Positions 4,401 to 63,248 of a stretch of 64,000 bases of DNA are shown here, one piece after another. This DNA comes from Felis catus (lineage: Eukaryota). The stretch's first letter is position 1. Every line of letters starts with the position of its first letter. The DNA lies in assembly GCF_018350175.1 (NCBI RefSeq), contig NC_058377.1:16492001-16556000 (forward strand), read 5' to 3'. The notes under the pieces are model-generated. The model saw nothing but the letters and a program-made list of their open reading frames with translations, did no database searches and was not told the origin of the DNA. A program made the translations under genes and the position numbers.

Positions 4401-7400
4401 TTTCATATTTGTCAGTATGATCTAAAGTGTTATTTCATTATTTTATTGTGTTCTTGTAACTAGTAAGGCCAAGAACATCTTGTTACTAATTCAGGTATCC
4501 CTTCCTTATGAATACTGATTCATATCTCTTGCCCACTTATAGGTTTGTGTTAGCTTCTGCAAGTCAGTAAGTGAAAGATTGTCTGGTAGAGAGCTGAGAA
4601 CTTTAGGAGTTGAAATTTTCTTTTCTGGCTTTTTTTGTTGTCTATTGATTTTTTTGTTGTTGTTCGTGGTTTTACTCTGCAGAACATTTTAATTTTTATG
4701 TATTATAATATTTACATAAAATGTATAGATTAATTTGAGGGTAATTGGTATCTTTTAATACGTATTATGTCTTCATTTATTCAAGGCTTTCATGTCCTTA
4801 AATAGTGACTGCATCTTTTTCCCATGAAGGTCTAGTTCGTTCTTTGATGGGTTAACTCCTGAATACTGTATACTTTTGGTTGCTACCGCAAACAGTACCT
4901 TTTTTATTTTTATTTTTTATTTATTTATTTATTTTTTTAATAAAAAAAATGTTTATTATTTTTGAGAGGGAGGGGGGAGGATGGGGCAGAGAGAGAGGGA
5001 GACACAGAATCCGAAGCAGGCTCCAGGCTCCGAGCTGTCAGCACAGAGCCTGACACGGGGCTCGAACCTACCGGCCGTGAGATCATGACCTGAGCCCAAG
5101 TCAGATGCCTAATAGACTGAGCCACCCAGGTGCCCCTGAGAATCTGTATTTCTAAAAACCCTTAGGAGGCTGATGTTGTTGGACCACAGAATATATCCTG
5201 AGAGCCTATGATCAGGACAAGACAAAGCATCCGTGGATTATGTCCCAGGGACATTGTGGCATGCTTTTCTACGTGGCAAGAGGAAGGCATAAATGTGAAG
5301 TGTAATCTCCTCTGGGGGTGCCTCATGGGGTGACAAGGACAGGCCTGCAGGTCATGCCACTGCCATCCCCTGAGGGCAGGTAGGAACAGTACCTTTTTTA
5401 AAAAACTTAATTTATTTTTTAAATTTACATCCAAGTTAGTTAGCATGTAGTGCAACGATGATTTCAGGAGCAGATTCCTTAGTGCCCCTACCCATTTAGC
5501 CCATCTCCCCTCCCACAACACCTCCAGTAACCCTCTGTTCTCCGTATTTAAGAATCTCTTATGTTTTGTCCCCCTCCCTGTTTTTATATTATTTTTGCTT
5601 CCTTTCCCTTATGTTCATCTGTTTTGCCTCTTAAAGTCCTCATATGAGTAAAGCCATATGATATTTGTCTTTCTCTGACTGACTAATTTCACTTAGCATA
5701 ATACCCTCTAATNNNNNNNNNNNNNNNNNNNNNNNNNNNNNNNNNNNNNNNNNNNNNNNNNNNNNNNNNNNNNNNNNNNNNNNNNNNNNNNNNNNNNNNN
5801 NNNNNNNNNNNNNNNNNNNNNNNNNNNNNNNNNNNNNNNNNNNNNNNNNNNNNNNNNNNNNNNNNNNNNNNNNNNNNNNNNNNNNNNNNNNNNNNNNNNN
5901 NNNNNNNNNNNNNNNNNNNNTGGCTATTGTTGATAGTGCTGCTATAAACATTGGGGTGCATGTGTCCCTTTGAAACAGCACACCTGTATCCCTTGGATAA
6001 ATACCTAGTGGTGCAATTGCTGGGTTGTAGGGTAGTTCTATTCTTAATTTTTTGAGGAACCTCCATATTGCTTTCCAGAGTGGCTGCACCAGTTTGCATT
6101 CTCACCAGCAGTGCAAAAGAGATCCTCTTTCTCCACATCCTTGCCAACATCTGTTGTTGCCTGAGTTGTTAATGTTAGCCATTCTGACAGGTGTGAGGTG
6201 GTATCTCATTGTGGTTTTGATTTGTATTTCCCTGATGATGAGTGATGTTAGCATTTTTTCATGTGCCAGTTGGCCATCTGGATGTCTTCATTGGAGAAGT
6301 GTCTATTCGTGTCTTTTGCCCATTTCTTCACTGGATTATTTGTTTTTTAGGTGTTGAGTTTGATAAGTTCTTTATAGATTTAGGATACTAACTAACCCTT
6401 TATCTGATATGTTGTTTGCAAATACCTTCTCCCATTCTATCGGTTACGTTTTAGTTTTGCTGATGGTTTCCTTAGCTGTGCAGAAGCTTTTTATTTTGAT
6501 GAGGTCCCAATATTCATTTTTGCTTTTGTTTCCCTTGCCTCTGGAGATGGGTTGAGTAAGAAGCTGCTGTGGCCAAGGCCAAAGAGGTTTTTGCCTGCTT
6601 TCTCCTCGAGGATTTTGATGGCTTTCTGTCTTACATTGAGGTCTTTCATCCATTTTCAGTTTATTTTTGTGTATGGTGTAAGAAAGTGGTCCGGGTTCAT
6701 TTCTCTGCATGTCGCTGTCCAGTTTTCCCAGCACCACTTGCTGAAGAGACTGTCTTTATTCCATTGGATATTCTTTCCTGCTTTGTCAAAGATTAGTTGG
6801 CCATACGTTTGTGGGTCCGTTTCTGGGTTCTCTATTCCATTGACCTGAGTGTCTGTTTTTGTGCTAGTACCATACTGTCTTGATGATTACAGCTTTGTAA
6901 TACGGCTTGAAGTCCAGGATNNNNNNNNNNNNNNNNNNNNNNNNNNNNNNNNNNNNNNNNNNNNNNNNNNNNNNNNNNNNNNNNNNNNNNNNNNNNNNNN
7001 NNNNNNNNNNNNNNNNNNNNNNNNNNNNNNNNNNNNNNNNNNNNNNNNNTATTGCATTCAATNNNNNNNNNNNNNNNNNNNNNNNNNNNNNNNNNNNNNN
7101 NNNNNNNNNNNNNNNNNNNNNNNNNNNNNNNNNNNNNNNNNNNNNNNNNNNNNNNNNNNNNNNNNNNNNNNNNNNNNNNNNNNNNNNNNNNNNNNNNNNN
7201 NNNNNNNNNNNNTTTCAGTGTACAAACAGTACCTTCTTTAAAAAAATTTTTTTTATATGGGAATGCAAGCTGGTGCAGCCACTCTGGAAAACAATATGGA
7301 GGTTCCTCAAAAGACTAAAAATAGAACTACTCTACGACCCAGCAATGGCACTACTATTTATCCAAGGGATACAGGTGTGCTGTTTCGAAGGGACACGTGC

Positions 7401-10400
7401 ACNNNNNNNNNNNNNNNNNNNNNNNNNNNNNNNNNNNNNNNNNNNNNNNNNNNNNNNNNNNNNNNNNNNNNNNNNNNNNNNNNNNNNNNNNNNNNNNNNN
7501 NNNNNNNNNNNNNNNNNNNNNNNNNNNNNNNNNNNNNNNNNNNNNNNNNNNNNNNNNNNNNNNNNNNNNNNNNNNNNNNNNNNNNNNNNNNNNNNNTCAG
7601 TCAGGGAAAGACAAATATCTTATGACTTTACTCATATGAGGACTTTAAGAGACAAAACAGATGAACCTAAGGGAAAGGAAGCAAAAATAATATAAAAACA
7701 GGGAGGGGGACAAAACATAAGAGATTCTTAAATACGGAGAACAAACACAGGGTTGCTGGAGGGGTTGTGGGAGGGGGGATGGGCTAAATGGGTAAGGGGC
7801 ACTAAGGAATCTGCTCCTGAAATCATTGTTGCAATATATGCTAACTAATTTGGATGTAAATTTAAAAATAAATTAATTAAATTAAAAAAAAATTTTTTAT
7901 ATTTTCCAGTTTCTTCATGCTGCTATGGAGGAACAGTGATTAGTATTTGTTCTTATATCCAGCAAACTTTCTAGGCTCTTGTCGGTTCTGATAATTTGTC
8001 TATCGATTTTGTATGGTTTCTGTCTTAACATTTTTTTCTACAAATAATGCTAGTTTTGCCTTTTTCTTTCTGACTTTATATCTGTTTCTTTCTGACTTTA
8101 TATCTCTTTCTACTTTTTCCTCTTTTCAATACTATGTTGGACATTATTATTTTTTTTTAATTTTTTTTTTAACGTTTATTTATTTTTGAGACAGAGACAG
8201 AGCATGAATGGGGGAGGGTCAGAGAGAGGGAGACACAGAATCCGAAACAGGCTCCAGGCTCTGAGCTGTCAGCACAGAGCCCGACGCGGGGCTCGAACTC
8301 ACGGACCGCGAGATCATGACCCGAGCCGAAGTCAGCCGCTTAACCGACTGAGCCACCCAGGCGCCCCTGTTGGACATTATTATTAATGAAATGGGCATTC
8401 TTTCTAATTACTGAGCTCTCTAATAAGTATATCATCATTTTCCAGACAAAAACCTAGATTCAACTGCAATATGATGACACCCAATGGGTCCTTTTGGAGG
8501 GGGGGTGAGGTGGAAATAGTTGCCACTAACCCCCAAGGAGCCAGCATAGGGCCAAGCAGATAGCTCTAATATACACTCGATTTACTCTTTTTCTTTTTTC
8601 TTTTACTGTTCCTTTTTATTTTTTAGTATTTCATGGTACAGAGGGACCACAGTTTGTTTACAGTTCACCCACTGGAGGACATCTGGGTCACTTCTGGTTT
8701 TTGGCTAATACGATTAAAGCTGCTCTGAACATTATCATACAGATATTTTTTTAATTTTCACAAATGATTTTATAATTTTTTTAAATATAATTTAGTCTCA
8801 AATTGGTGAACATACAGTGTGTAAAGTGTGCTCTTGGTTTTTGGGGTAGATTCCCCTGGTTTTTCACTTACATACAACACACAGTGCTCATCCCAACAAG
8901 CGCCCTCAATGCCCATCACCCATTTTCCCGTCTCCCCCAGCCCCCCATCAACCCTCAGATTGTTCTCTGTATTTCAGAGTCGCTTGCGGTTTGCCTCCCT
9001 CCCTCTGTTTATAACTATTTTTCCCCTCCCCTCCCCCATGGTCTTCCGTTAAGTTTCTCAAGATCCACATATGAGTGAAAACGTATGATTTACTCTTAGC
9101 CCACCACGTATTCATTCATCCAGTTAAGCTGAGCTCCTCCAGGTTAAGCTGAGCTCCTCCCGTGTGCCAGGCAGTGAAAAAGACAGTCCTGGTGATTGGC
9201 TCTAAGCAAAGTAATTAGGATAAAATGTGTGTTAGGGAAGTGTTTGGACAGGCAGAGAAGGCCTGCTTTAGAAAGATGTTTCAACAGAGACATGATGAGT
9301 GAATAGCAATTAACTAGGGCAGCGGGAAGAGAGAAGAGTGTATCTGGCAAAGACACAATAGTTTGTGGGGAGGCCCGGGATCTAGAGTGTGGTCTGTTGG
9401 AGACCTGGAGAGCCTGGGAGGAATGACCCAACACTGATGAGGAGCCAGGGCCTTGCAGACTGTCCCAAGAAACTTCAGTTTGGCCCAAGGGTCATAGAAA
9501 GCCATCAAAAGTGTTTAAACAGAAAGGTGACAGGATTGCATTAATATTTTAGGAAGATGCTCCAGCTGCAGGGGGACTAAGTTGGAGAAAAGCAGATAAA
9601 CAGACCATTCGGGTTATGGCTGGACTTGGGGATTGACTGGGTGTGGCTGGATGGGAAAGAGAAGGCAAGAACACTTCCGTGTTCCTGACCCAAGCCACTT
9701 AGGTTAGATGGTGGTGCCACTTGCGGAGACAAATACAGGAGCGAGAGCAGGAAGGTGGAGTTTAGTTGCAGGAATGTGGAGTCTGAAGTACCTGCGGGTT
9801 ATGCAAGGAAAGATCTCCAAGGCCCAGTGGTACTTACGGGCAAGCAGAGGAGTCTGGGGCCGGAGGTGCGGATTTGGAAGCCCTACGTTGATAGATAGTG
9901 GCTGAGGCCACAGGCATTCATGAATTGGCTCAGGGACAGTGTATGTGGAACAAGGTCAGAGAAGTCGAATATGGTGTCGTAACGCCCCAGGGAGGGCCCA
10001 CAGCCACGTGGTCCAGGACCCTGGGGCCACAGTGGAAATACTAGGACATTTTGACCCTCTTCTTTCTTTTTGCCAGTTGCCAGGTATAGACTTCGAATAG
10101 TTGAACCACCAAAAGTACCTGTGGGAAAAACGCCCAACTCTGATAAAGATGGTGAGTGGGGGTAGTGGGTTCTCTGGCATGGTCATGCGGCCTGGGCCGG
10201 ACCCCAAAGCCAGTGAGCTGTGGCGCACAACCTCCTTTTTCTCTGCACAGGCCCAGCTCTTGAGCCCAACCTGTGGATGTGGGTAAACCCCAGCATCGTG
10301 TATCCCCCCGGAAAGCTGGAGGTCCCAGAACCTCATAAGGGAGAGGATCTCCCAGGCGCACTCCCCTCCCCTCAGCCAGCCCCCAAAGAGGAAGACTTTG

Positions 10401-14747: not shown

Positions 14748-14805
<58 letters not shown>

Positions 14806-15596: not shown

Positions 15597-15642
<46 letters not shown>

Positions 15643-17033: not shown

Positions 17034-17083
<50 letters not shown>

Positions 17084-32296: not shown

Positions 32297-36857
<4,561 letters not shown>

Positions 36858-39740: not shown

Positions 39741-41695
39741 CAACAAAACTAAAAGATAACCTACTCAATGGGAGAAGATATTTGCAAATGACATATCCAA
39801 TACAGTGTTAGTATCCAAAATATATAAAGATACTTTATATAAACTCAACACCACAAAGCAAATAATCCAATTAAAAATGGTTGGAAGAGGGATGCCTGGC
39901 TGGCTCAGTCAGTAGAGCATGCAACTCTTGATCTCAAGGTTGTGAGTTCAAGCCCCACATTGGGTACAGAGATTACTCAAANNNNNNNNNNNNNNNNNNN
40001 NNNNNNNNNNNNNNNNNNNNNNNNNNNNNNNNNNNNNNNNNNNNNNNNNNNNNNNNNNNNNNNNNNNNNNNNNNNNNNNNNNNNNNNNNNNNNNNNNNNN
40101 NNNNNNNNNNNNNNNNNNNNNNNNNNNNNTCAGTCGGTTAAGCATCTGACTCTTGGTCTCGGCTCAGGTCATGACCTCACAGTTCATGAGTTCCAGCCCC
40201 GTGTCGGGCTCTGCTCTGACAGTGTAGAGATTGTCCCTTCTTGGGATTCTCTCTCTCTCACTCTGCCCCTCCCCCACGTGCACTCTCTCTAAATAAATAA
40301 ATAAACTTAAAAAAAATGAGATATCACATCACACCTGCAGAATGACTAAAANNNNNNNNNNNNNNNNNNNNNNNNNNNNNNNNNNNNNNNNNNNNNNNNN
40401 NNNNNNNNNNNNNNNNNNNNNNNNNNNNNNNNNNNNNNNNNNNNNNNNNNNNNNNNNNNNNNNNNNNNNNNNNNNNNNNNNNNNNNNNNNNNNNNNNNNN
40501 NNNNNNNNNNNNNNNNNNNNNNNNNNNNNNNNNNNNNNNAAAAGATATATGTACCTCTATGTTTATTGCAGCATTATTTACAACAGTCAAATCATGGAAA
40601 TAGCCTGATTGTCCATCAATACGTGAATGGATAAAGAAGATGTGATAGAGTCACCTGGGTGGCTCAGTTGGTTGAGCGTCTGGCTCTTGATCTCTGTTCA
40701 GGTCACGGTCTCATGGTCATGGGATCAAGCCCTGTGTCGGGCTCCACGCTGATGGCTGGAGCTGCTTGGGATTCTCTTTCTCTCTGTCTCTCTCAAAATA
40801 AATAATAAACATTAAAAAAAAGAGAGAGAGATGTGGTGTGTGTGTGTGTGTGTGTGTGTAACTCAGCCATAAAAAAGAGTAAAGTCTTGCCATTTGCAAC
40901 ACCATGGATCGATCTAGAGAGTATAATGCTACGTGATATAAATCAGAGAAAGACAAATACCACATGATTTCATTCATATGTGGAATTTAAGAAACAAAAC
41001 AAGGGGCGCCTGGGTGGCGCAGTCGGTTAAGCGTCCGACTTCAGCCAGGTCACGATCTCGCACTCCGTGAGTTCAAGCCCCGCGTCAGGCTCTGGGCTGA
41101 TGGCTCAGAGCCTGGAGCCTGTTTCCGATTCTGTGTCTCCCTCTCTCTCTGCCCCTCCCCTGTTCATGCTCTGTCTCTCTCTGTCCCAAAAATAAATAAA
41201 CGTTGAAAAAAAATTTTTTTTTAAAAAAAAGAAACAAAACAAAGGAACAAAGAAAAAGGAGACAAACCCAAAAACAGGCTGTTAACCATAGAGAACAAAT
41301 TGGCAGCTGCCAGAGGGGAGGTGGGTGAAGGATGAGTAAAATAAATGAAAGGGATTAAGAAGGTTCTTATGATGGGGTGCCTGGGTGGCTCAGTGGGTTA
41401 AGCGTCCAGCTCTTGCATTTGGCTCAGGTCATGATCTCATGGTTCGAGGGATCAAGCCCTGTGTTGGGCTCTGTGCTGGCAGGGAAGAGGCTGCTTGGGA
41501 TTCTCTCTCTCTGCCCCTCCCCCATGCATGTGCGCTCTCTCTGTCTCAAATAAACTTACAAAAAAAAGTATACCTATCGTGATGAGCACTGAATAATGTA
41601 TAGATATAGAACGGTTGAATCACTCTATTGTACACCTGAAACTAATATAACGCTGTATGTTAACTATACTGGAATCAAAATGAATATAAATAAAA
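39741..41695 (+). mobile_element. LINE-1 3' fragment carrying several nested SINEs
   Basis: NKTK...WEKIFANDIS ORF2 remnant, and a 3' end GTACACCTGAAACTAATATAAC typical of carnivore L1. Confidence 0.8.
41003..41230 (+). mobile_element. Young felid SINE nested in an L1, with TSD
   Basis: Intact CpGs, and direct repeat AAGAAACAAAACAA on both sides. Confidence 0.9.
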
Positions 41696-43789: not shown

Positions 43790-45943
43790 GAGGGGCGCCT
43801 GGGTGGCTCAGTGAGTTAAGCGTGAGTCTTTAATTTCCGCTCAGGTCATGATCTCATGGTTTATGAGATCCGTCCCCGAATCGGACTCTGCGCTCTCAGC
43901 TTGGATTCTCTCTCTCCCTCTCTCTGCCCCTCTCCCACTTGTGCTCCTCCTCCCTCTAAACAAACAAACAAACATTAAAAAAAAAGGAAAACAATATGGC
44001 TTTAGAAAAACCACACCCACAAGTGATTTGGGGGTCCTTCATTTTGTATCTCGCAAGGCTACTGAATGCCTTTATCAGTTCTAACAGTTTTTTGGTGGTC
44101 TTTAGGGTTTTCTATATATAAAGTCATGTTATCTGAAAACAGTTTTAAGGGTAGAGGAAGATCATCTGAATCCGGTATTCTCAGGATAATTTTACCTTCT
44201 TAAGTATTATTGAAGACTCTAAAGAGCCATGTGGGTTATCTCTGTGGATATTTTTCACATCATTAAAACTGAGAGATTTAGGGGGTGCTTGGGTGGCTCG
44301 GTTAAGGTTTTGACTCTTGATTTCCACTCAGGTCATGATTTCACAGTTGTTGAGTTCGAGCCTCACATTGGGCTCTGCATTAACAGCGTNNNNNNNNNNN
44401 NNNNNNNNNNNNNNNNNNNNNNNNNNNNNNNNNNNNNNNNNNNNNNNNNNNNNNNNNNNNNNNNNNNNNNNNNNNNNNNNNNNNNNNNNNNNNNNNNNNN
44501 NNNNNNNNNNNNNNNNNNNNNNNNNNAAAAAAGAAACAGAGGGGTGCCTGCGAGGCTCAGTGGGTTAAACATCTAACTCTTGATTTTGGCTCAGGTCATG
44601 GTCTCATGGTTTGTGGGTGTGAGCCCTAACTCGGGCTCTGTGCTGACAGTGCAGACCCTGCTTGGGATTCTCTCTCTCCCTCTCTCTCCGCCCCTCCCCC
44701 ACTCACTCTCTATCCCTCTCTCAAAATAAAAATAAACGGAAAAAACTGAGAGATTTAAAAAGTACTTATGAATACATTTTAAAGTAATGCTAATAAACCA
44801 AATAGGACATCAATGTAAACAGCTTTTTAAATGACAAATAATTATATTTTAAGAATTTATGAGGGGTGCCTGGGTGGCTCAGTCAGTTAAGTGTCTGACT
44901 TCAGCTCAGGTCATAATCTCGCGGTTTGTGAGTTCGAGCCCCGCGTCGGACTCTGTGCTGACAGCTGGGAGCCTGGAGCCTGCTTCGGATTCTGTGTCTC
45001 CCTCTCTCTCTCTGCCCCTCCCCCACTCATGCTCTGTCTCTCTGTCTCAGAAATAAATACATATTAAAACTTTTTAAAAACTTAAAAAAAAATTTTTTAA
45101 TGTTTATTTATGTTGAGAGAGAGAGCGTACACACATGCACAATTGGGGGAGGAGCAGAGAGAGAGAGACTCCCAAGCAGGGTCCCCACTCAGCGTGGAGC
45201 ACAATGCAGAGCTCTATCCCACAACCATGTGATCATGACCTGCACTGAAATCAAGAGTCGGAAGGTTAACCAACTGAGCCACCCAAGAACTCCGTTCTTT
45301 TTTTTTATTCTTCTATTTTATGAATATTCTTTCTTTGTTTAGTGTTTATTTATTTTTAAGAGATAGAGAGAGACAGAATGTGAGCGGGGGAGGGCAGAGA
45401 GAGAGGGAGACACAGAATCCGAAACAGGCTCTAGGCTCTGAGCTGCCAGCACAGAGCCTGATGTGGGGCTTAAACTCAACAGCTGTGAGATCATGACCTG
45501 AGCCAAAGTCAGATGCTTAACCAACTGAGCCAACCAGGCACCCCCAGAGATTTTGGATTATTGATTCAATCTCCTTACTTGTTATAGGTCTAATCTGACT
45601 TTCTGGGTTTTTTTTAGTTTTGGTAGTTTGTGTGTGTCTATGAATTTGTCCATTTTACCTAGGTTATCCACTTTGTTGATACATAGTTATTCGTACCATT
45701 CTCTTACAATCCTTTTTAGTTTTGTACAGTTAGGAATAATATCCCTTCTTTCACTTCTGATTTTAGTAATTTGATTCCTCTCTGTCTTCTATTTTAGTTA
45801 ATTTACCTATAGATTTATTTATTTTGTTGATCTTTCCAAAACATTAACTTTTGGTTTTGGTGATTCCCTATTTTTTTTTTCTATATTGTTCCTCTCTGCT
45901 TTCACTTTTATTATTTTCTGTTACATTTGAGTTTAGTTTAGTT

Positions 45944-53670: not shown

Positions 53671-56600
53671 TTATAATTCATCATTCTTCAAAGTCCGCTT
53701 CTGTCCTGTCGGCTGCTCCTTCTGTTCCGGTTCTGCTGGGAGTGGGGAAGAGCGAAGGAATGCCAGCAGGTGAGACGAAGGTAACTGACCCCGTTCTGGG
53801 CAGATCCTCCCTGCTGGGCCCTACTAGGCTTCCTGGGTGCCCCCAGCCCCATGCTCACCTGCTCCAGGACCTTCTAACTCCAGAGGTTCGGTGTCTGCCT
53901 GTTCAGATCCTGCTTTTGGGAGGAAGAGGTTAGCCTCTGCAGAAGGGAGGAAGGGACTAATGAAAGGGTTGGCAAACTTTTTCTATAAAAAGACAGATGG
54001 TGAATGTTCTAGGGGTTGTGGGCTACACCCGGCTTCTTTGCACAGACATGCTTGTGTAGATATGTAAGAACCTAAAAATGTAAGGGCTGTTCACAGCTTG
54101 TGGACCTTCTAGAAACAGGCTGTGCCTGCAAGTCTGCCGACCCCTAGGCTTAGCAATATCCATATTCCCAATCACTTTCTTCAACTCACCAGTCTCTTTC
54201 TCAGGTTCTGAAATGGGCTTTGCATCTTCAGTCTGGCCTGGAGGAAAACCAGGGGTAAAATGTAGTCCCAGGAGGGAAAGGAGGCCTTCTTCCTGCCCAG
54301 TGGCACCTGGAGCCAGGCACCCTGCCCTCACCTGGTGGAGGGATGACCTTCTCTGCTTGGTCACTGGCACTGGCATTGAGGGGAGGCTCTGCCCGGGTTG
54401 CATTCTTGTCCTTGGGTCGGGGCCGGGGCTTGGTAAACTTGGCCTTGTTGAGCAGATACTGCACCTCACGGTCCAGGGCCATCATCTTGGCCTCGATGTC
54501 TTTTGAGAGCAACACGGGTTTCTCTGTGGCGGGAAGCTTGGCCTGCTCGGCCATGGTCGCATTCTTCCAGGCCTGTGGGTGAGCCCAGGACAGGCTCAGA
54601 GCTAGCCCTGGAGAGGGTAGGTTATCTCTGGCCCGGATGAAATACACCCCAGACCGGCCCCGGGCTCTTCCCTCAGATGGCAAACCACTCCACTACTCCT
54701 GGCTGTCAGCCCCACGATGGTAAGCAGACTCTTCAGAATGGCATCTGAGGCTCCCCACAAAGGAGTCCCAAACTCATAGCCATGTCTGTGGCTTACAATA
54801 CTAGGGACCAACTACAGCTGAAGCTCTTGATTATTCCCTGGTCTGTCCACTTCTGAGCTCTGGCTCAATATCACTCTCCACACACCCAAAAGGAAGAGTT
54901 TCGGCCTCCTGTGACAAGTCTTCCCTGGCTCACCTTCTGAGTGCAGCTCAAGCCCCAGCTGTTTGGAGCAGCTGCTCTAACCTCATAGGGATGGGCTCTG
55001 CTGCTCCTGCAGTCTGACAAAACTCATGGCCGTGACCCTTGCTTGGGGCTAATCAGACGTGGCCTCAAATGTAAATGACTTCCGCCTTCCCGATTAGCTG
55101 CCGGGCCAGGAGGCAGCAGCTGCTGACCCCGGTTTCTCGGCATCTCCTCTCTGCCCAGCATAGCACACCTTGCCAGGGGAGCATCCCAGTAAGTGTTCAT
55201 GCAGGGATTACCCAGGTCTCGTTGATGACTTTCTCTAGCGTTGTCATCTCCACCTCAGTGAAGATCTGTTCCATCTCTGGGATGAGTCGGGCGCCCCTGT
55301 AAGCCAGGAAGGAGACGGTGAGCCCAGGGGAGAGAGGGATCTGGGGTGTGGGCATGGGGCATGGGAAGCTGATGGACCTCCAGGCTTGGCAGGACCGAAT
55401 AAGGAAGAAAATCGAAGGGGCTGCTCACTTGAGGAACATGCTGGAATGGTTGAGGAGATTATCAAGGGCAGCCAGCCGTTCAGGCCACTTCTTGCGCTCT
55501 TCTACCCGAAAAAACAACCCGTGGCATAGCTTCCTCAGCTCAGTCAGCTTCTCCTTCAGCATCTGACAGATGCAGGGTGGGAGTGGGCAGAGGGGGTTGA
55601 AGGGATGAGGGCCTGGCCCTGGAGCCGACCCCGCGTCCTTCTCCTGGCCTCACACTCCAGCTCTCCTCACCTTCTCTGACCTTCTGCCTGTAAAGAGCAA
55701 AGCGAGGGCTCCCATCCCACCCACCACGTCCTGGGAAGCCGCTTACCACTGTGGTGGCCCCAAAGCCCTCGTCCTCCAGCCAGGCAGAGGCAGCGCTGAG
55801 TTTCCCAGAGATCTCCTCGCGCTGCTCCTCTGTGGACACTTCCTGGTACTCAGGCTGGTACAGTTTGTCCTAGAGAGGTGCACACGGGCCCAAGCATGCA
55901 CCGAACCCCAAGAGCAGGGCTCACAGAGGCAGACCCTCCTCAGACACAGGTCCCGGGGCAGCTGTGTCTCCCAGCCCACCAACCTGGGTCTCAAAGATAA
56001 AAGCTTCCAAGCTGTTGGCAGCCTTTTCCCGTTCCTGCTTCTCTAGGTCTCGGGACGTCAAGTCTTGAAGTCTGTGGGACAACAGAAGCAAGCATGAGGG
56101 AGAGAGCATGTTGACCTCAGACCCTGGGGCAGACGGCTCTCCCTCCCATGGGTGCCACTGCCCTTACCACCCTGTGCGTGCATGCTCACAAGCCTCTACT
56201 CACTTTTGCACTGAGTGGGCCAGCTCATCCTCGGGCAAGTCAGGCAGGTCCAGAACCACCAGCTCCACCCCAATCTCCTCTACCATTCTTTGCTTCCGGG
56301 CAGGCTTCTGCTTCTTTTCTTCCTCTGGGGCTGGAGGGGCAGCCTCAGACCCTGCCTCCTTTTTCTCACTTGGCTTCTGGTGGGGGAAAGAAACGAGGAG
56401 GTCAGGGGAAGCTCAGGTCCTTCTATTCCCCACAGGCAGGCATCTGTTCCCTTCGCCTCCGGCTCACCTGGGCCTCAGGCTTTTCCTCGTTTTCTTTTTC
56501 TGTGGCCTTTTCTTCCTCAGGAACCGCAGCCTCCTTCGGCTCAGTGGGTGGGGGCGGCGAGGTGTCCTCCACTGGGGCCTCCGCCTCCTCCTTGAGCTCC

Positions 56601-59600
56601 GCTTGCTCTCCAGGCTCATCCTTGCTCCCCTCAGCAGGGCTCTCCTCTTCCTCCTGGGAAACACGAGGTCCCCAGCAGAGCCTATGGATGAATCGCTCAG
56701 CCGGCAACGCCAAATCCCCCAGGCTCTGCTGCGAAGGGGCCTGCTGCTCCCAGCACAGCCTGGGGACAGGCAGATGACCATACGGTAACAGGCTGTGCAG
56801 ACTACGGCAGGCAGTCTGGTCGGAGAAGCAGTGCTTCGAGATGAAGGGAATGTGCCCTGGAGCCCGAGCACAGGGACAGCTCAGGGTCCAGAGGAGGGTA
56901 TGGTTCACTCGGCAAGGGCCCGGGGAAAGCGGGGAGGGGGGGGTCTAGTCAGTCCTAGGCAGCTGGAACGCCTGCCCCAATCCCTCCCTGCCTCTGTTGC
57001 TACTACCCGGCCCCATTCACCATCCTCCGAGCTCCCCTGGCTCCGTGCTGGCCTTACCTGGACAGTGTCTGTACCATTCTCTTTAGTGTCTGGTGTGGTA
57101 CCACCTCCAAACAGGCTGGAGATGGTGTTGCCAAGTTCTAGGAGGAAGAAAACCCAAAGACTCAAAGGGGCCACAGCAGTGACACCACCTCCTTGCCCAA
57201 GGGCAAGGCCCGCCCGCCTCCCCCAAAGGCACACAAGCGCATCCTCTCTCACACATACACGCGCACACGCACACACACACACACGCACACACACACACAC
57301 ACTCATCTTACTGGTCAAGGTAGATTCCTCCTCTGGGCTGTCCTCCACCAATGTCTCAAACACAGACTCCACCTAGAAACAGGGATTCGAGGTGACGAGA
57401 CGCACACGCTAACCCACCTCGTCCCCACAAACGTCCTGCCACGGTGGGTGTCTACTCACACACATCCACGTGACCCGTGGCGGTGCTGGCCTATTCCCTC
57501 ACCCGCCTTCTTCTAAGGGATCTTGAATCAAGTCATCACTACCCCTCTGGATTATGAGCCCTCCTGAGGACTGGGTCATAGCTCCTTTCCCTCACGGCCT
57601 TGCACTTCTCCACTTGACAACAGAATGGGCCGTGATTTCCCACGGTACCTTCTAAAAGATGTTAACCCCCAGAACTACTTTTTTTTTTTTTAATTTTTTT
57701 TTCAACGTTTTTATTTATTTTTGGGACAGAGAGAGACAGAGCATGAACGGGGGAGGGGCAGAGAGAGAGGGAGACACAGAATCGGAAACAGGCTCTAGGC
57801 TCCAAGCCATCAGCCCAGAGCCTGACGCGGGGCTCGAACTCACGGACCGCGAGATCGTGACCTGGCTGAAGTCAGACGCTTAACCGACTGCGCCACCCAG
57901 GCGCCCCTACTTTTTTTTTTTTTTTTTTTAGGTAGGCTTCATGTCTAGCGTGGAGCCCAGCACAGGGCCTGAACCCACAACCGCGAGATCAAGACATGAG
58001 CTGAAACCAAGAGTTGGACTCTTAACTGACTGAGAAACCCTGGCCCCCCCCCCCCCCCAACCGCCCAGCCCCGAACCATTCTTTGAGAACGGATTACTTG
58101 GCCATTCTACAGATCCTGAAATTTACAACATCTGTCACTTTTTATAGGCCCTGACCCACCAGGTCCCTGGTTAGCTGTGTTAAGAGCCAGGACTTATCCA
58201 CCTCCATAAACCTTTCTCGCTTATCATGTTCTAACACCAGGTGGAACTGCTCTGCAAAGGCTGATGGGGCCCGGACCCTTGCCCTGTACCCACGGTCTCA
58301 TTCTACTCTCACCCTGATGAGGCTGAGCACGCCACTCTCATCCAGGTTGAAGTGAGCCTTGATGCCCTTAGACTCGTAGTCGGGATACTTCTTGAAGCTC
58401 TCACCCACACCTTTCAGCTTCACTGTGGTCAAATTCTGGGAGCCAAATACCCTGGTTGGGGAGGAGAGAGCAAGTCCAGGGAACTCAGCCAGCCAGCCTC
58501 CAGCCTTTGACTACAAGGCCTCCCAGCACGAAATGTTGGGCCCTCCAGAGAAAATGCTCACCCCAATCCTGACCACACAGCCCGCTTCCCCCTGTCAGCC
58601 CTGTGGCCCCAGATCCCCCCTTCTGGAGCCCCCACCTCACCCCACCCTCTCACCGAAGATCCTCGGGCCCCAGGAAGCCCAGGTCACCATAGTTGATGTG
58701 GAAGTTAAAGTCATGGTTGTAGCGGTTAAAGGTGATGACTTTGCGTTGAGGGTAGGGCCCCATTCGGGAGAAGAGAACACGCTTATTGTGCTTCAGGCTG
58801 CGAACCCCAGGCTCCTCCTCCACCTCCCTTGTGAACTCCACCTACACAGCAGGCAGAGAGGAAGCACACTGGAGAGCCAGAGCAGATTCTGGGGTAAGGG
58901 TACGTGGAGACCGTCAACTGGCAGAAAACAAGGGTACAGGCTACGGCAGACGAGAGAAACCACCCTCGGTGAGGTGATCAGACAGGCCTACTCACCAGGA
59001 TGGGGTAGATCACCGCATCTCGCACTACAAACGGCTTCACCTTGAAGGCTTTACTGAGCGCGGCTGCCTGGTACACAGCCCCCATAGCAGCTGCTTCGTC
59101 TGCGTTGATGTTCTTCCCCAGTTCCTCCCTGCAAAAGTCCTGCGCTTCAGCACGTCTACTCTGGAGCACCCAGCCTGGTCGCCCTCTCCGCAGCCCTGGC
59201 CCCAATGCCTCAGCACCCACACTCACTTGCCCACAGCCTTCAACAGCACCTCCTGAACTTTGGGGACCCGAGTGGCCCCACCAACCAGGATCACTTGCTC
59301 AACCTCATCCTACAGACAGAGAATGGGAAATGGAACGGCACATCATCAGCCCTCCTCGGCACCGACACATCCGGTGACATTCCCGTCCCCTCCCCCCTGC
59401 CACCTAACCACTTTCTATCCCACATGCCCCCCACCCCACGCCCACATCTCACTACCCCCTCACCAAATTCATTTCGGCACTCTGGAGGGCCTGCTGCACA
59501 GGCCCGGGCACCCGCTCAAATAAATCTGCACACAACTCTTCAAACTCCGCACGGGTCACTTTCGCCTTGAAGTCCACATCATCCATCAGGCCCTCGATCT

Positions 59601-62600
59601 AGGAGGAGGATGGGGCAAGTCAGAGCGCCCACCCAGGTCCTCCTCTTTGGGGGAGCAGGTCAGAAATCGAGGGAATTGGACTTTGGGAGAATGGTAGGAG
59701 GCCTGGGAAGAGGGATGGGCCACACCGCACACCAGGGGCCTAGCTCAGGATGGAGAATATTTGCCCTCGACCAGCCATGAGTGGGCACCTGTGCCATGTG
59801 ATCAGCGTTGGCACTCAGGACGGTTTTGAGTCGATTCGCCTCCCGTAGCAGCTTGGCCATGGCACGGGGGTTCTCCCGCACATCCTTAGCTCCCTGGCCC
59901 TTCCGCTGTTTGTTGAAAAGCCTTGCCAGGTGCTCACGCAGCCGGAGTTCCATCTCCAAGCCCCCCAGGGTGCGGTCAAATCTATCCAGGGAAAAGAGAC
60001 AGAAAAAGCGTGAGGAACACACAGTGTCCCTTCATCGACCTAGGAACCTCACCTTCCTCCCACGTGGCTGACACCTCAGTGGCAGTTCACGTGTGTATCC
60101 AATCCACCGTACTTACTGGGCATTGACTATCTGTTTGTCTCTGGAGATGCAATTAACAGCAAAGAGACAGGGAACCTGCTGTCAAGGAGCTTACAGTCTA
60201 GCATCGAACAATTACATGAAAACAATGCCAACCACCCCGAGTTATAAGGGAGACATACAACAGCGTTAGAAGACGTAGAAGGGAAATGCCCCCTATTTAC
60301 AGACGCCATAGAAAGTTCTGTGGAGATGTGATGCCTGAGCTGAAACCTGCAGGATTGAGTGGAGTTAATGGGTTGAAGAGAAAACAACCCTAGATGGAGG
60401 GACCAGTGTGCATCAAGACCCTGAGGTGAGAAACAGCCCAATGAATAAGTTCCAAAGGACAGGCATGGTAGAACTCAAAAAACAAAGGCTCTGGGTAGAG
60501 ACAAAAGGCAGGAGTCAGAGCTCTCACAGGCCACAATAAAGGTCTGGGACCGCTAAGGTTTTTTTTTCCTCTGAGAGAGAAAGCTGGCGAGAATGCGGGC
60601 ACGTGCGAGAGCAGGGGAGAGGGGCAGAGAGAGAATCTTAAGCAGGCCCCAGAGCCAAAATCAAGAGTCCGACATTCAACCAACTAAGCCATCCAGGCAC
60701 CCTGCCACTGAAGGCTTTTAAAGAAATAGACTATAATCAGGTTGGCATTTTGAAAACAACCTTCTGGCTACAACGTGGAGAAAGAACTGAAGGGGGACCA
60801 CAGTGAAGACAGGGAGACCTTCAATCGTAACCCTGCAGGTCAGAGATGATGGAAGCTGGGACTAGAGTGGTGGAGGAAGAGCCGCACAGAAAAGAACGGC
60901 TCAGAAAACCAGACCACGTCACCAGTAAGTACGCTGAAAGTGACAAGAACAAGCAAATGACCGCATCTGACACTGCGCATGGTCGGTAGCCCCACGGATT
61001 TCCTAAGTAATAGCTCTCGGTAAGTTCCCTGCCTTCCCAGTTTGGGGAAGCAGGAGGGAAACCCCCATGTGGCCCTTTACAGAGCCCGTTTTCCAGAGCA
61101 TGAGCTAGGCTTCGACCCACAGGCTGTCTTCCCAAACTGTCCCCTTCTCTCTCCATCTTCCCCCGGTTCTTCCAAGAGGTACCCTACAGTGACCGATGCT
61201 TCAGGAGAACATTCATGCAGGGAGCAGGAAAAGGAGGCAGCTGCCCCTCCAAGAAGAAACCCCCGACCCGAGGGTGTCTCAGCAAGTACCCACTTACCCC
61301 ACTCCCCGGATCTGCAGTTGTGGCTGCATCCCCGCCTCCTTCGTCTTCACCGTCTGGTAGGTGACAATGGTGCACACGGTGCTGCCAGAGCCCATGTCAT
61401 AGAACATGACGTTCTGTGGAGACACCAAGACAAGTGTCACGGAAACCTTCTCTAACTCCAAGGTGCTGTATCGACTCTCCACTGAAAGCCGAAAAGCCCC
61501 AACGCTGGCCGAGAGGGGCCTGGCGTTGCATTTTGTCAAGGGCTAGTCGTGCAAACGAGATGCAAAACAGAGTCAAGTGGTCTCCGTCGTCACAGCCAGC
61601 CAGCCTCCAAGTCCGGTGAGAAGTTCCTCCCCAGCTCACCTGGGCAGTGGTGTTGATATCTTTCCGGCGGAAGACGCCGTAGCTGAGGGCGGTGGCGGTG
61701 TTGTCATTGATGAGCTGTAGCACTTTGAGGCCAGCCATGCGAGCCGCCTGCAGCACAGCTCGGCGCTCAGCCTGATTGAAGAAGGCTGGCACGGTGATCA
61801 CTGCATCCTTGATGGGCTGCTCTACAGAGGGGAACAGACCAAGGTTCCCACCAGCTCCATACTCAGACGACCCTTTCCGAGTCTTGCTACTAGTGACCTT
61901 CTGGGCCAAGTAACTCTTTGCTGTGTGGGGCTATTCTGTGCATTGTAGGATCTCGGGCAGCATCCCTGGCTTCTGCTCATTAGATGCCAATAGCAGCTCC
62001 CCAGTTGTGACAACCAAAGATGTCTTCAAATATGGCTGGCTGTTCCCTGGGAGGCAAAACTGTCCCACTGAGACCCTAGGGAACCTGGCCACCGCTGGCC
62101 CCACCTTAGCCACTCACCTGCAAAATCTTCAGCCAGGGAACGTGAGTAATTGAGAACCATGCCGAGTACCTCCTCAGGTGAGAACTGTAGCTGCCTGTGG
62201 GAAGGGGATGAATTAAAGGCAAGGACAACGAGCAGGGGAGCCCATCAGGCCCACTGAGCCCACTGTCCCCAGCACAACACTCACGGACTGATCTGGAAGT
62301 GCACAGTCTGCCTCTGTGGGTCGAAGCCTAGCTCATGCTCTGGAAAACGGGCTCTGTAAAGGGCCACATGGGGATTTCCCTCCTGCTTCCCCAAGAGGTG
62401 CTGGAAGTAACGCAGTGTCGCCTTTGGATTCTTGATGGCCTGAGAACAGATAAATAAGGAATATGGCGTGAGGTTCCCAAGTCCACCATCACCTACCTCT
62501 CACATCAGAGGCTGGTAAGAGAACAGGCTCTGGGGTCTGACATCTCTTTTCTGCCCGTCGCTTATGGGAAGGGGGTGGGCTGTTAGCTCACCATGCTTGC

Positions 62601-63248
62601 TGCACTGTCTCCAAAGAATCTTTCATTTTCTTTCAGGGTCACAGTCACTGGGGTTTTCCTTCGGGATTCCCTGAAAAAAAAGAGACACAGGGCTCAGGTG
62701 CCTATAGCAGGATGCGGATTCAGGAGCCTCAGCACCCCAAATACAATCACTTAGACACCAGCCTGTTGTGGGCCCTAGCAAGAACACACACGGGCTTGGA
62801 GCACAGGCTTCCCTCTTCCCCCACCCCTGACACTGGGGCCGCCCTCACTTGTTCAAGACAATTTCCATGGGCACTCCGGGTTTGACGATGGCCACCTTCA
62901 TGGACTCGCTGCCCAGGTCCACAGACATCACTGCCAGCGTGTCTGAAAAGGAAAGAGATTTGTTGATTACCCCCTGTTCCCCAACACTCCTGAGTCCCCT
63001 CTAACCAAAGCACTTCACCCTCCAAAGAGAAGGACAGATAGCAAAGATAAAACCCTAGGTTCAGCAACTCAAGAGTCCAACTTCCAACTAAAAGCCTCCT
63101 CTCCCACCATAGTTCATTCATCAATTCTTCTTTTGAGCCCACTACTGGGGTACATACCACTCAGTGCCAACAGATCTGCCAAGAGCACAGCCATCAAGGC
63201 CCAACAGGCTAGCCTCCTCGGCCTCTGCCTCCTGACGGTGGCTGCCAT
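53671..63248 (-). CDS. HYOU1: Hypoxia up-regulated protein 1 (ORP150/GRP170), ER Hsp70-family nucleotide exchange factor, 998 aa
   Basis: 25 coding exons: 63248-63158, 62942-62849, 62670-62592, 62439-62285, 62194-62118, 61821-61640, 61413-61298, 59981-59789, 59598-59464, 59309-59227, 59128-58996, 58841-58654, 58451-58313, 57372-57312, 57137-57058, 56653-56468, 56376-56204, 56071-55984, 55869-55747, 55562-55429, 55296-55212, 54572-54332, 54237-54190, 53909-53859, 53732-53671. Signal peptide, Hsp70 motifs ([26 protein letters not shown]) and C-terminal NDEL. Confidence 0.96.
57678..58045 (-). mobile_element. Two tandem CAN-SINEs in a HYOU1 intron
   Basis: A young element at 57678-57907 followed by an older, shorter one. 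Confidence 0.85.
61042..61122 (+). repeat. 81-bp inverted duplicate of HYOU1 exon 5 (partner 62314-62394)
   Basis: 80 of 81 nt match the reverse complement of 62314-62394. Confidence 0.92.

What the first reader, a model, noticed from the sequence alone, without database searches (positions are those of the whole stretch)
61042..62394. Antisense copy of HYOU1 coding exon 5 inside HYOU1 intron 8: a predicted 81-bp exon:intron RNA duplex
Seen: 61042-61122 (TTGGGGAAGCAGGAGGG...TTCGACCCACAG) is the reverse complement of 62314-62394, the middle of coding exon 62439-62285 ([27 protein letters not shown]). The only difference is C at 61062 against A at 62374, which becomes a G-U wobble in the pre-mRNA, so the stem could pair along its full length. 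This is non-TE, gene-derived sequence. The 1191-nt loop holds exons 6-8, which total 375 nt and could be skipped in frame. Inference: the duplex could mask exon 5, loop out or back-splice exons 6-8, or act as an editing-complementary sequence for ADAR recoding of an ER-stress chaperone. Near identity implies either a recent templated inversion or ongoing gene conversion or selection.
Basis: partly seen in the sequence, partly recalled or inferred. Interest (0 to 1): 0.85.

Follow-up and report, generated by a model that had tools for sequence, protein, structure and literature searches.

The report
Inverted exon fragment inserted in HYOU1 intron
An 81-base stretch from the middle of a coding exon of the chaperone gene HYOU1 was copied backwards into an intron 1.2 kb downstream; a related species lacks it, so it is a young one-step copying accident that could let the pre-mRNA fold on itself, but no RNA effect could be tested here.

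Summary
Window 61042-61122 is the reverse complement of 62314-62394, 80 of 81 bases identical. It is the only complex-sequence inverted pair of 95% identity or more in the 64 kb. The source lies in HYOU1 exon 62439-62285. The copy lies 175 nt into the intron after exon 61413-61298, and the three exons between total 375 nt.

New here: an antisense ORF from a related species (P0004) runs from the left flank straight into the right flank without the block. The window has exactly 29 more codons, or 87 nt: the 81-nt copy plus a 6-nt filler, GCTGTC. The left junction shares a 2-nt TT with both target and donor. There is no poly-A and no L1 target site. So this is a derived, lineage-specific templated inverted insertion from a template switch or break-repair synthesis, not an ancient co-evolving pair.

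The predicted RNA duplex is real on paper (-180 kcal/mol, with one G-U pair). Editing, exon skipping and circRNA remain untested. Presence in other animals of this species is not proven: 14 runs hold 0.98 of the sampled words, which does not decide it.

Most likely reading: a near-neutral young insertion, with low-level ADAR editing as its likeliest RNA consequence.

The parts
61042..61122 (+). Inserted 81-nt copy. The + strand carries the sense sequence of the exon, so the HYOU1 (minus-strand) transcript carries it as antisense. It starts 175 nt downstream of the 5' splice site at 61298/61297.
62314..62394 (-). Source segment inside the coding exon 62439-62285 (encodes [27 protein letters not shown]). 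It lies 45 nt from the exon's 3' splice site and 29 nt from its 5' splice site.
61062..61062 (+). The only mismatch: C in the copy against T in the exon sense strand (A at 62374 on +). It is a synonymous Asn codon and gives G-U in the pre-mRNA.
61123..61128 (+). 6-nt filler GCTGTC, inserted together with the copy and not derived from the exon. It resembles the left-flank CTGCC, and with the original TTCCCA it makes an apparent 11-nt direct repeat.
61042..61043 (+). TT shared by the target site (AGT|TTCCCA) and the donor edge (CTC|TTGGGG): a 2-nt junction microhomology. The 87-nt insert can therefore be placed at 61042-61128 or at 61044-61130.
61029..61039 (+). Left member CTGCCTTCCCA of the apparent flanking direct repeat. 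The right member CTGTCTTCCCA is at 61124-61134 (10/11 identical).
   Evidence: 6 of 3869 random sites in the window score as high; local shuffle p = 0.0028
62285..62439 (-). HYOU1 coding exon holding the source (155 nt). Skipping it alone would shift the frame.
61298..62194 (-). The three exons inside the loop: 62194-62118 (77 nt), 61821-61640 (182 nt) and 61413-61298 (116 nt), 375 nt together. They encode part of the Hsp70-type nucleotide-binding domain.

Best explanation
This is a real, lineage-specific 87-bp insertion in the intron after exon 61413-61298 of HYOU1. It consists of an 81-bp reverse-complement copy of the middle of an upstream coding exon plus a 6-bp filler. It was made in one mutational event by a DNA polymerase that left the intron and copied the opposite strand 1.2 kb away. 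That was either a replication template switch of the FoSTeS/MMBIR kind or synthesis-dependent repair of a break. The polymerase then rejoined with 2 nt of microhomology on one side and a short filler on the other. The event is young and most likely nearly neutral. As a by-product, the pre-mRNA gained an exon:intron complementarity of 81 nt. If that duplex forms in the interval before the intron is removed, the most likely consequence is promiscuous, low-level A-to-I editing of both arms by ADAR. 19 adenosines lie in the exon arm, and 14 of them would recode. A selected role in splicing or circularisation is less likely. Shown: the repeat, its junctions and its absence from a relative. Inferred: the mechanism of origin, neutrality, and any RNA effect.
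For: The repeat and its sharp ends are shown. A related species lacks it: P0004 (193 aa, on a Logan contig of 2576 nt) reads ...DFLSSSSREVPCL-ST-FPNRPPLS...KRYP. The window in the same frame reads ...[14 protein letters not shown]-[27 exon-derived residues][10 protein letters not shown]...KRYP. Removing 61042-61128 (87 nt) makes the two collinear without gaps. P0006 comes from a contig of the same recorded length (2576 nt), possibly the same contig. It is that species' exon-5 ORF with the source sequence (...[30 protein letters not shown]...), so the relative has the donor but not the copy. The junctions show TT microhomology, a 6-nt filler, no poly-A and no TTTT/A site. These are the marks of templated insertions at breaks or template switches as described in PMC11724301, PMC5453318 and PMC5110952. 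The one mismatch and the filler argue against a trivial assembly duplication. The pair is unique in the window. Folding gives a full-length duplex at -179.8 kcal/mol, against -22 and -29 kcal/mol for the arms alone, and the MFE of the 1451-nt pre-mRNA stretch pairs the arms. HYOU1 is absent from the supplementary tables held for a human recoding-site atlas, PMC8897444. This agrees with there being no conserved editing duplex.
Against: No read-level confirmation was possible. The 14 DNA-like runs of the same organism all hold 0.98 of the sampled words. If they all lacked the insertion, about 9 of 255 words would be missing instead of 4-6, and the probability of seeing only 4-6 missing is then 0.17. 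So presence in other individuals is favoured only weakly. The identical 0.98 in all runs hints at something specific to the reference. The comparison with the relative is at protein (ORF) level from one contig of unknown species. No felid-level relative could be examined across the site. Neutrality and editing are inferences.
Confidence: 0.65

Rival explanations
1. The duplex is a working, selected RNA device. It could be an editing-complementary sequence that directs ADAR recoding of exon 5, or a structure that regulates exon choice or produces circHYOU1(exons 6-8), kept near-perfect by selection or gene conversion.
For: An 81-bp near-perfect duplex is predicted, with the mismatch falling as G-U. 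The looped exons total 375 nt in frame. The stem has the geometry known to promote back-splicing and exon skipping (PMC8330042). Intronic duplexes can induce exon editing (PMC3479170).
Against: The copy is absent from a related species that has the donor exon, so it is not conserved. One difference in 81 sites needs no selection. The mismatch keeps pairing only as G-U, and a single case cannot show co-variation. Loss of exons 6-8 would remove part of the Hsp70 ATPase domain. Intron 5 is 90 nt and is likely spliced before the intronic arm exists. HYOU1 is not among human recoding sites in the tables held. No expression data could be read.
Confidence: 0.1
2. The insert is an assembly artefact, or a private or rare variant of the animal that was assembled, and not a feature of the species.
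For: All 14 runs from 4 studies show the same 0.98 share, so the same few words are missing everywhere. The insertion-specific words are about 3.5% of the stretch, and the data do not exclude their absence (P = 0.17). Junction-spanning ORFs are not in the protein collection, while a control ORF 55 nt away is. However, the no-insertion version of the ORF is not there either, so this last point carries no weight.
Against: An artefact would not be expected to carry a 6-nt filler, a 2-nt microhomology and a base difference from its source. The flanks are continuous and collinear with the relative on both sides. There are no gaps or Ns near it. The word share is closer to what is expected if the insertion is present.
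Confidence: 0.1
3. The insertion is real and young, but the template was RNA. A fragment of HYOU1 transcript was reverse-transcribed and used as a patch to repair a break, as in class 2 templated sequence insertions.
For: The fragment lies wholly within one exon of a well-expressed gene. It is short and lacks a clean target-site duplication and poly-A. It has end-joining features, namely microhomology and non-templated bases, as described for class 2 insertions (PMC5110952).
Against: The donor lies 1.2 kb away in the same gene, which is what local DNA template switching predicts. The described RNA-derived patches come from distant loci without preference. The filler looks like an imperfect re-copy of the adjacent flank (10/11 apparent repeat), which suggests repeated local DNA switching. 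The fragment contains no exon-exon junction, so the two origins cannot be told apart from the sequence.
Confidence: 0.12
4. It is an L1-mediated retro-insertion of a transcript fragment (class 1 templated insertion or processed fragment).
For: There is an apparent 11-nt flanking direct repeat, CTGCCTTCCCA / CTGTCTTCCCA.
Against: There is no poly-A tail, no polyadenylation signal and no TTTT/A target. The comparison with the relative shows that five bases of the right repeat member are inserted filler and not duplicated target.
Confidence: 0.02

Closest known systems
Template-switch mutations that create inverted repeats and RNA hairpins in one step (four-point model; Loytynoja and Goldman 2017, PMC5453318; Monttinen et al., PMC8794818 and PMC10710096)
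   Same: A reverse-complement copy of nearby sequence appears in a single event where the ancestor had none. It gives perfect base pairing at once. It sits in the sense-transcribed intron of a host gene, where such events are reported to be enriched and mostly neutral.
   Different: The model and its genome scans cover short-range switches. Here the donor is 1.2 kb away, the copy is 81 nt, and the donor is a coding exon, so the new stem joins an exon to an intron three exons downstream. A 6-nt filler also has to be explained.
[quoted passage not shown]
   Same: The copy is inverted, there are a few bases of microhomology at one junction, the other junction looks end-joined with extra bases, and the donor stays intact.
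   Different: Those were measured in yeast at induced breaks, mostly at 5-34 bp and up to about 150 bp, with foldback next to the break. Here it is a germline event in a mammal, and no break or fork direction can be inferred.
Class 2 templated sequence insertion polymorphisms (Onozawa and Aplan, PMC5110952)
   Same: A short patch of transcribed, non-repeat sequence is inserted with end-joining marks and without poly-A.
   Different: Those patches come from distant loci and are thought to be RNA-derived. This one comes from 1.2 kb away in the same gene.
Intronic editing-complementary sequences and editing-inducer duplexes of ADAR targets (for example the Gabra-3 intronic duplex, PMC3479170; GRIA2-type exon:intron pairing is from general knowledge)
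   Same: An intronic sequence downstream is complementary to a coding exon, so adenosines of the exon would sit in double-stranded RNA until the intron is removed.
   Different: Known examples are conserved, imperfect, and usually in the adjacent intron. This one is perfect, 81 bp, three introns downstream and absent from a relative. No editing has been seen.
Reverse complementary matches that promote back-splicing and exon skipping (PMC8330042)
   Same: Complementary arms bracket a set of exons and bring a downstream 5' splice site near an upstream 3' splice site.
   Different: The upstream arm is exonic, not intronic. The intron between it and the first looped exon is only 90 nt. No back-splice junction has been observed.

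Membership tests
Template-switch mutation (four-point model) | The new fragment is the reverse complement of sequence nearby on the same chromosome | tested here: met
   80/81 identity in reverse complement, 1191 nt away
Template-switch mutation (four-point model) | The ancestral or sister sequence lacks the fragment, and one switch-and-return explains the whole difference | tested here: inconclusive
   The relative lacks it, with a difference of exactly 87 nt. However, 6 nt (GCTGTC) are not explained by the single copy, and the comparison is at ORF level from one contig.
Template-switch mutation (four-point model) | Short range: the switch points lie close together | tested here: not met
   The donor is about 1.2 kb from the insertion site. 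The authors state that long-range switches are outside their model.
L1-mediated (class 1) templated insertion | Target-site duplication of at least 5 bp | tested here: not met
   There is an apparent 11-nt repeat, but the relative shows that CTGTC of the right member is inserted filler and TTCCCA was already repeated in the target.
L1-mediated (class 1) templated insertion | Poly-A tail with an upstream polyadenylation signal, and a TTTT/A insertion site | tested here: not met
   None is present at either junction.
Class 2 templated insertion / break patch | No target-site duplication and no poly-A; microhomology and non-templated bases at the junctions | tested here: met
   TT microhomology and the GCTGTC filler
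Class 2 templated insertion / break patch | Donor is a distant locus, copied through RNA | tested here: not met
   The donor is 1.2 kb away in the same gene. An RNA or DNA template cannot be told apart because the fragment lies within one exon.
ADAR editing-complementary sequence | Intronic sequence able to pair with the exon around the edited adenosines | tested here: met
   81-nt duplex at -179.8 kcal/mol, with 19 adenosines in the exon arm. This is a prediction only.
ADAR editing-complementary sequence | A-to-I changes seen in RNA but not in DNA | not testable with these tools
ADAR editing-complementary sequence | Conservation or co-variation of the pairing across species | tested here: not met
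   Absent from the related species
circRNA-promoting reverse complementary match | Complementary arms flank the circularised exons | tested here: inconclusive
   The arms bracket exons 6-8, but the upstream arm is exonic and intron 5 is 90 nt.
circRNA-promoting reverse complementary match | Back-splice junction reads | not testable with these tools

The most novel reading that the evidence does not exclude
A single templated inversion created, at one stroke, a working editing-complementary sequence. In this felid lineage the 81-bp exon:intron duplex forms on nascent HYOU1 pre-mRNA, and ADAR edits several of the 14 recodable adenosines of the exon, so the mature mRNA of an essential ER chaperone carries lineage-specific recoding. 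It would be a natural, datable example of how exon editing sites are born, and possibly a source of circHYOU1(6-8).
Probability: 0.25. Interest if true: 0.6.

Novelty: new member of a known kind. Interest (0 to 1): 0.4.

Why it matters
Inverted copies made by template switching are known to create RNA hairpins, and even microRNA genes, in one step. What stands out here is the donor and the size: 81 nt of coding exon from a conserved, essential ER chaperone now faces its own antisense in a downstream intron of the same transcript. That makes the locus a clean natural experiment. It has a before state (the relative) and an after state. It asks whether a perfect long exon:intron duplex is tolerated, edited by ADAR, or disturbs splicing. 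If it is edited, it shows a route by which recoding sites can appear instantly. If nothing happens, it shows how well co-transcriptional splicing shields exons from distal complementarity. As a DNA event it is ordinary.

Tried and rejected
So there is no read-level evidence on junctions, editing, skipping or back-splicing. After no letters of 59847-59887 were sent to any outside search. The Rfam scan started at 59900, and ORF look-ups avoided the ORF 59660-60022. The local self-comparison of the whole window file was a script on the closed machine.

3. Exact look-up of junction-spanning ORFs found them not in the collection. This is uninformative, because the no-insertion version is not there either. 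The reference for ORF B also translates its TTG start as L.

4. A homologue search with the 111-aa minus-strand ORF across both junctions found nothing.

5. A scan of JGI metagenome contigs for a 24-mer of the left flank gave 0 hits.

7. An Rfam E-value scan found nothing at either arm.

8. A clean 11-bp target-site duplication was considered first. It was given up after the comparison with the relative showed that part of it is filler.

9. The prokaryote-type promoter and terminator scan is irrelevant here.

10. P0005 and P0007 are an antisense ORF of exon 8 from a more distant mammal, which could be a primate or human; I cannot tell. They were compared once before I suspected this, then left aside. 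They start to the right of the insertion site and bear on nothing.

Exons were searched one by one by reference.
Full report
**1. Observation**

The sequence at 60900-62600 was read directly. The repeat finder reports arms 61042-61122 and 62314-62394: 81 nt, 99% complementary, 1191 nt apart.
- A base-by-base comparison gives 80 of 81 identical in reverse complement, and identity ends abruptly at both ends.
- The only difference is C at 61062 against T in the sense strand of the exon (A at 62374 on the + strand). It is the third base of an Asn codon (AAT in the exon, AAC in the copy). In the minus-strand transcript it gives a G-U pair.
- blastn finds no third copy in the window.
- A self-comparison of all 64 kb shows this is the only complex-sequence inverted pair at 95% identity or more. 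The others are dinucleotide repeats, poly-A tracts and diverged SINEs.

**2. Gene context**

The minus strand carries a gene with these features:
- A signal-like start, [12 protein letters not shown]... near 63245, and an end ...KNDEL near 53674.
- An exon at 61643-61813 that matches the Hsp70 family (PF00012, E = 4.7e-19), with HSP105 as the best solved relative.

This fits HYOU1/GRP170. The exon boundaries are:

| Exon | Coordinates | Length |
|---|---|---|
| 5 (holds the source) | 62439-62285 | 155 nt |
| 6 | 62194-62118 | 77 nt |
| 7 | 61821-61640 | 182 nt |
| 8 | 61413-61298 | 116 nt |

- The source lies in the middle of exon 5, 45 nt from its 3' splice site and 29 nt from its 5' splice site.
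- The copy starts 175 nt into the intron that follows exon 8.
Skipping exon 5 alone would shift the frame.

Exons were searched one at a time by reference.

**3. What could not be done**

- The look-up of sequencing runs listed 14 runs of one coded organism from four studies. Each holds 0.98 of 255 sampled words. It also listed metatranscriptomes labelled gut, mammal or feline that hold 0.16-0.50.

So there is no read-level evidence on the junctions, on editing or on splicing. No letters of 59847-59887 went to any outside search afterwards.

The word share does not settle presence.
- 87 of the 2471 words of the stretch are specific to the insertion (junctions, filler, mismatch), so about 9 of the 255 sampled words are.
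- A share of 0.98 means 4-6 words are missing.
- If the insertion were absent from all 14 runs, seeing only 4-6 missing has probability 0.17.

This leans towards presence but does not prove it. The identical share in all runs suggests that the same few reference-specific words are missing everywhere.

**4. Comparative evidence through ORFs**

Because DNA of relatives could not be fetched, I used open reading frames that happen to cross the site.
- On the + strand an ORF starts at the first codon of the copy and runs to 61455 (137 aa). On the minus strand a 111-aa ORF crosses both junctions. Neither is in the protein collection by exact look-up.
- A control ORF 55 nt to the left (60846-60986) is in the collection. 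It occurs exactly, on ENA contigs of up to 6152 nt, and as a version with 3 of 47 residues changed, on a Logan contig of 4929 nt. So host DNA of this species and of a close relative is in that collection.
- A homologue search with the 137-aa ORF returned three proteins.

P0004 (193 aa, Logan contig of 2576 nt) is 79% identical over query residues 28-131. Upstream of that it continues into the left flank:
- P0004 reads MDFLSSSSREVPCL-ST-FPNRPPLSIFPRDGTKRYP...
- The window in the same frame reads [15 protein letters not shown]-[[27 protein letters not shown]][21 protein letters not shown]...

Deleting 61042-61128 from the window makes the two collinear without any gap.

P0006 (100 aa, on a contig of the same recorded length, 2576 nt, possibly the same contig) is that species' exon-5 ORF. 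It contains ...[38 protein letters not shown].

So a related species has the donor exon and the same intron flanks, but not the copy.
- Judged from amino-acid differences in non-coding sequence, that species is roughly a tenth diverged in the intron. Its name is unknown.
- The insertion is therefore derived and lineage-specific, and its length is 87 nt: the 81-nt copy plus GCTGTC.

P0005 and P0007 come from a more distant mammal, which I cannot exclude to be a primate or human. They start to the right of the site, bear on nothing, and were left aside. A search with the minus-strand ORF found nothing. The cat-like no-insertion ORF is not in the collection either, so the missing junction ORFs say nothing about other cats.

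**5. Junction anatomy and origin**

- With the relative as a guide, the target was ...CTGCCTTCCCAGT|TTCCCAAAC...
- The donor edge is CTC|TTGGGG. The two T at 61042-61043 therefore belong to both, a 2-nt microhomology.
- On the other side the copy ends at 61122 and is followed by GCTGTC (61123-61128) before the original TTCCCAAAC resumes.
- That filler, together with the original TTCCCA, mimics the left flank CTGCCTTCCCA. This is why the insert appears flanked by an 11-nt direct repeat, 10 of 11 identical. Only 6 of 3869 random sites in the window score as high, and the local shuffle gives p = 0.0028.
- I first read this repeat as a target-site duplication. The relative shows it is not a clean one. 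It looks more like a second, short and imprecise re-copy of the flank. This is suggestive only.
- There is no poly-A tail and no TTTT/A site, so L1-mediated insertion is excluded.

These features are those of templated inverted insertions: a template switch to the opposite strand, or synthesis-dependent break repair with an end-joined second junction (PMC5453318; PMC11724301). An RNA-derived patch of the class 2 kind (PMC5110952) cannot be excluded, because the fragment lies within one exon. The donor being 1.2 kb away in cis favours a local DNA switch.

The base difference, the filler and the microhomology all argue against an assembly artefact.

**6. Age**

- One difference in 81 sites gives a maximum-likelihood age of about 4-10 Myr, with an interval of 0.1 to about 50 Myr. 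This assumes the intronic arm evolves neutrally and the exonic arm at about a third of that rate, for rates of 1.0-2.2e-9 per site per year. Those rates are from general knowledge.
- The age would be zero if the difference was made by error-prone copying in the event itself.
- Nothing calls for gene conversion or selection.

**7. RNA level (prediction only)**

- The two arms pair along their whole length at -179.8 kcal/mol. Each arm folding alone gives -22 and -29 kcal/mol.
- The minimum-energy fold of the 1451-nt pre-mRNA stretch contains the full stem.
- The exon arm stays in the transcript. The duplex can therefore form from the moment the intronic arm is made until that intron is removed. 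Splicing of the three short introns in between only shortens the loop.
- The exon arm has 19 adenosines. Editing of 14 of them would change the amino acid.
- The 5' splice site of exon 5 lies inside the loop. So this is not the classical looping-out geometry for skipping exons 6-8.
- It is the geometry that favours back-splicing of exon 8 to exon 6 (PMC8330042). But intron 5 is 90 nt and is likely removed before the intronic arm exists.
- Losing exons 6-8 would remove part of the ATPase domain, so a strong effect would be harmful.

My committed reading is this: the duplex forms in a fraction of nascent transcripts and draws promiscuous low-level ADAR editing, with little effect on splicing, and the insertion is close to neutral.

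Supporting negatives: no known RNA family matches either arm. HYOU1 does not appear in the supplementary tables held for a human recoding atlas. The papers found for HYOU1 with RNA-editing terms were reviews on other topics, judged by title and abstract.

**8. Comparison with what is known, and verdict**

The closest known kind is the template-switch mutation that creates perfect inverted repeats and RNA hairpins in one step, often in introns and mostly neutral (PMC5453318, PMC8794818, PMC10710096).

This case differs in three ways:
- Range: the donor is 1.2 kb away, which the four-point model explicitly leaves out.
- Size: the copy is 81 nt.
- Donor: it is a coding exon, so the new stem ties an exon to a distal intron.

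It works like an editing-complementary sequence on paper but fails the conservation criterion, and editing is untested. I rate it a new member of a known kind of mutation, of moderate interest as a natural experiment.

I put about one in four on the chance that the duplex is detectably edited in the mature mRNA. I put about one in ten on the insert being an artefact or private to the assembled animal.

Noticed in passing
window 61019-61040 (+ strand): GGTAAGT followed at once by a pyrimidine tract and CAG (ggtaagttccctgccttcccag). On the + strand this looks like a 5' and a 3' splice site fused. In the HYOU1 transcript it reads AACUUACC, like the 5' end of U1 snRNA. The related species' ORF (P0004, ...R-E-V-P-C-L...) implies GGGAAGT there, so the GTAAGT is not conserved and is probably chance.
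   Followed up: partly
window 61028-61039 versus 61043-61054: The left flank and the first bases of the insert form a 12-nt imperfect palindrome (10/12) around GTT. The target site resembled the antisense of the donor's edge. This may have helped the switch, or it may only reflect a pyrimidine tract facing a purine tract.
   Followed up: partly
window 60994-61660 (+ strand, antisense to HYOU1): A long antisense ORF over exon 8 and the start of the following intron is called as a protein on contigs of at least two other mammals (P0004, P0005). The similarity simply mirrors the conserved exon on the other strand. It is not evidence of an antisense gene.
   Followed up: partly
window 40992-41216 and 57692-57918: An inverted pair of SINE-like elements, 227 nt at 93.8% identity, 16.5 kb apart. 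The second lies inside a HYOU1 intron next to a long T/A tract.
   Followed up: no
window 14753-14802, 15602-15639, 17036-17081: Dinucleotide microsatellites in direct and inverted arrangement within 2.3 kb. Another CA/GT run lies in a HYOU1 intron near 57100-57300, seen as CVCVCV in the frame translations.
   Followed up: no
window 5713-5920, 6921-7596, 35084-35255, 39982-40539, 44390-44526: Eight runs of N, 1326 bases in all. None is near the finding.
   Followed up: no
Sequencing-run table: All 14 best DNA-like holders, from four studies, show exactly 0.98 of the sampled words. The same four to six words seem to be missing in every animal, which points to one or two reference-specific bases, or the insertion itself, within 60400-62900.
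   Followed up: partly
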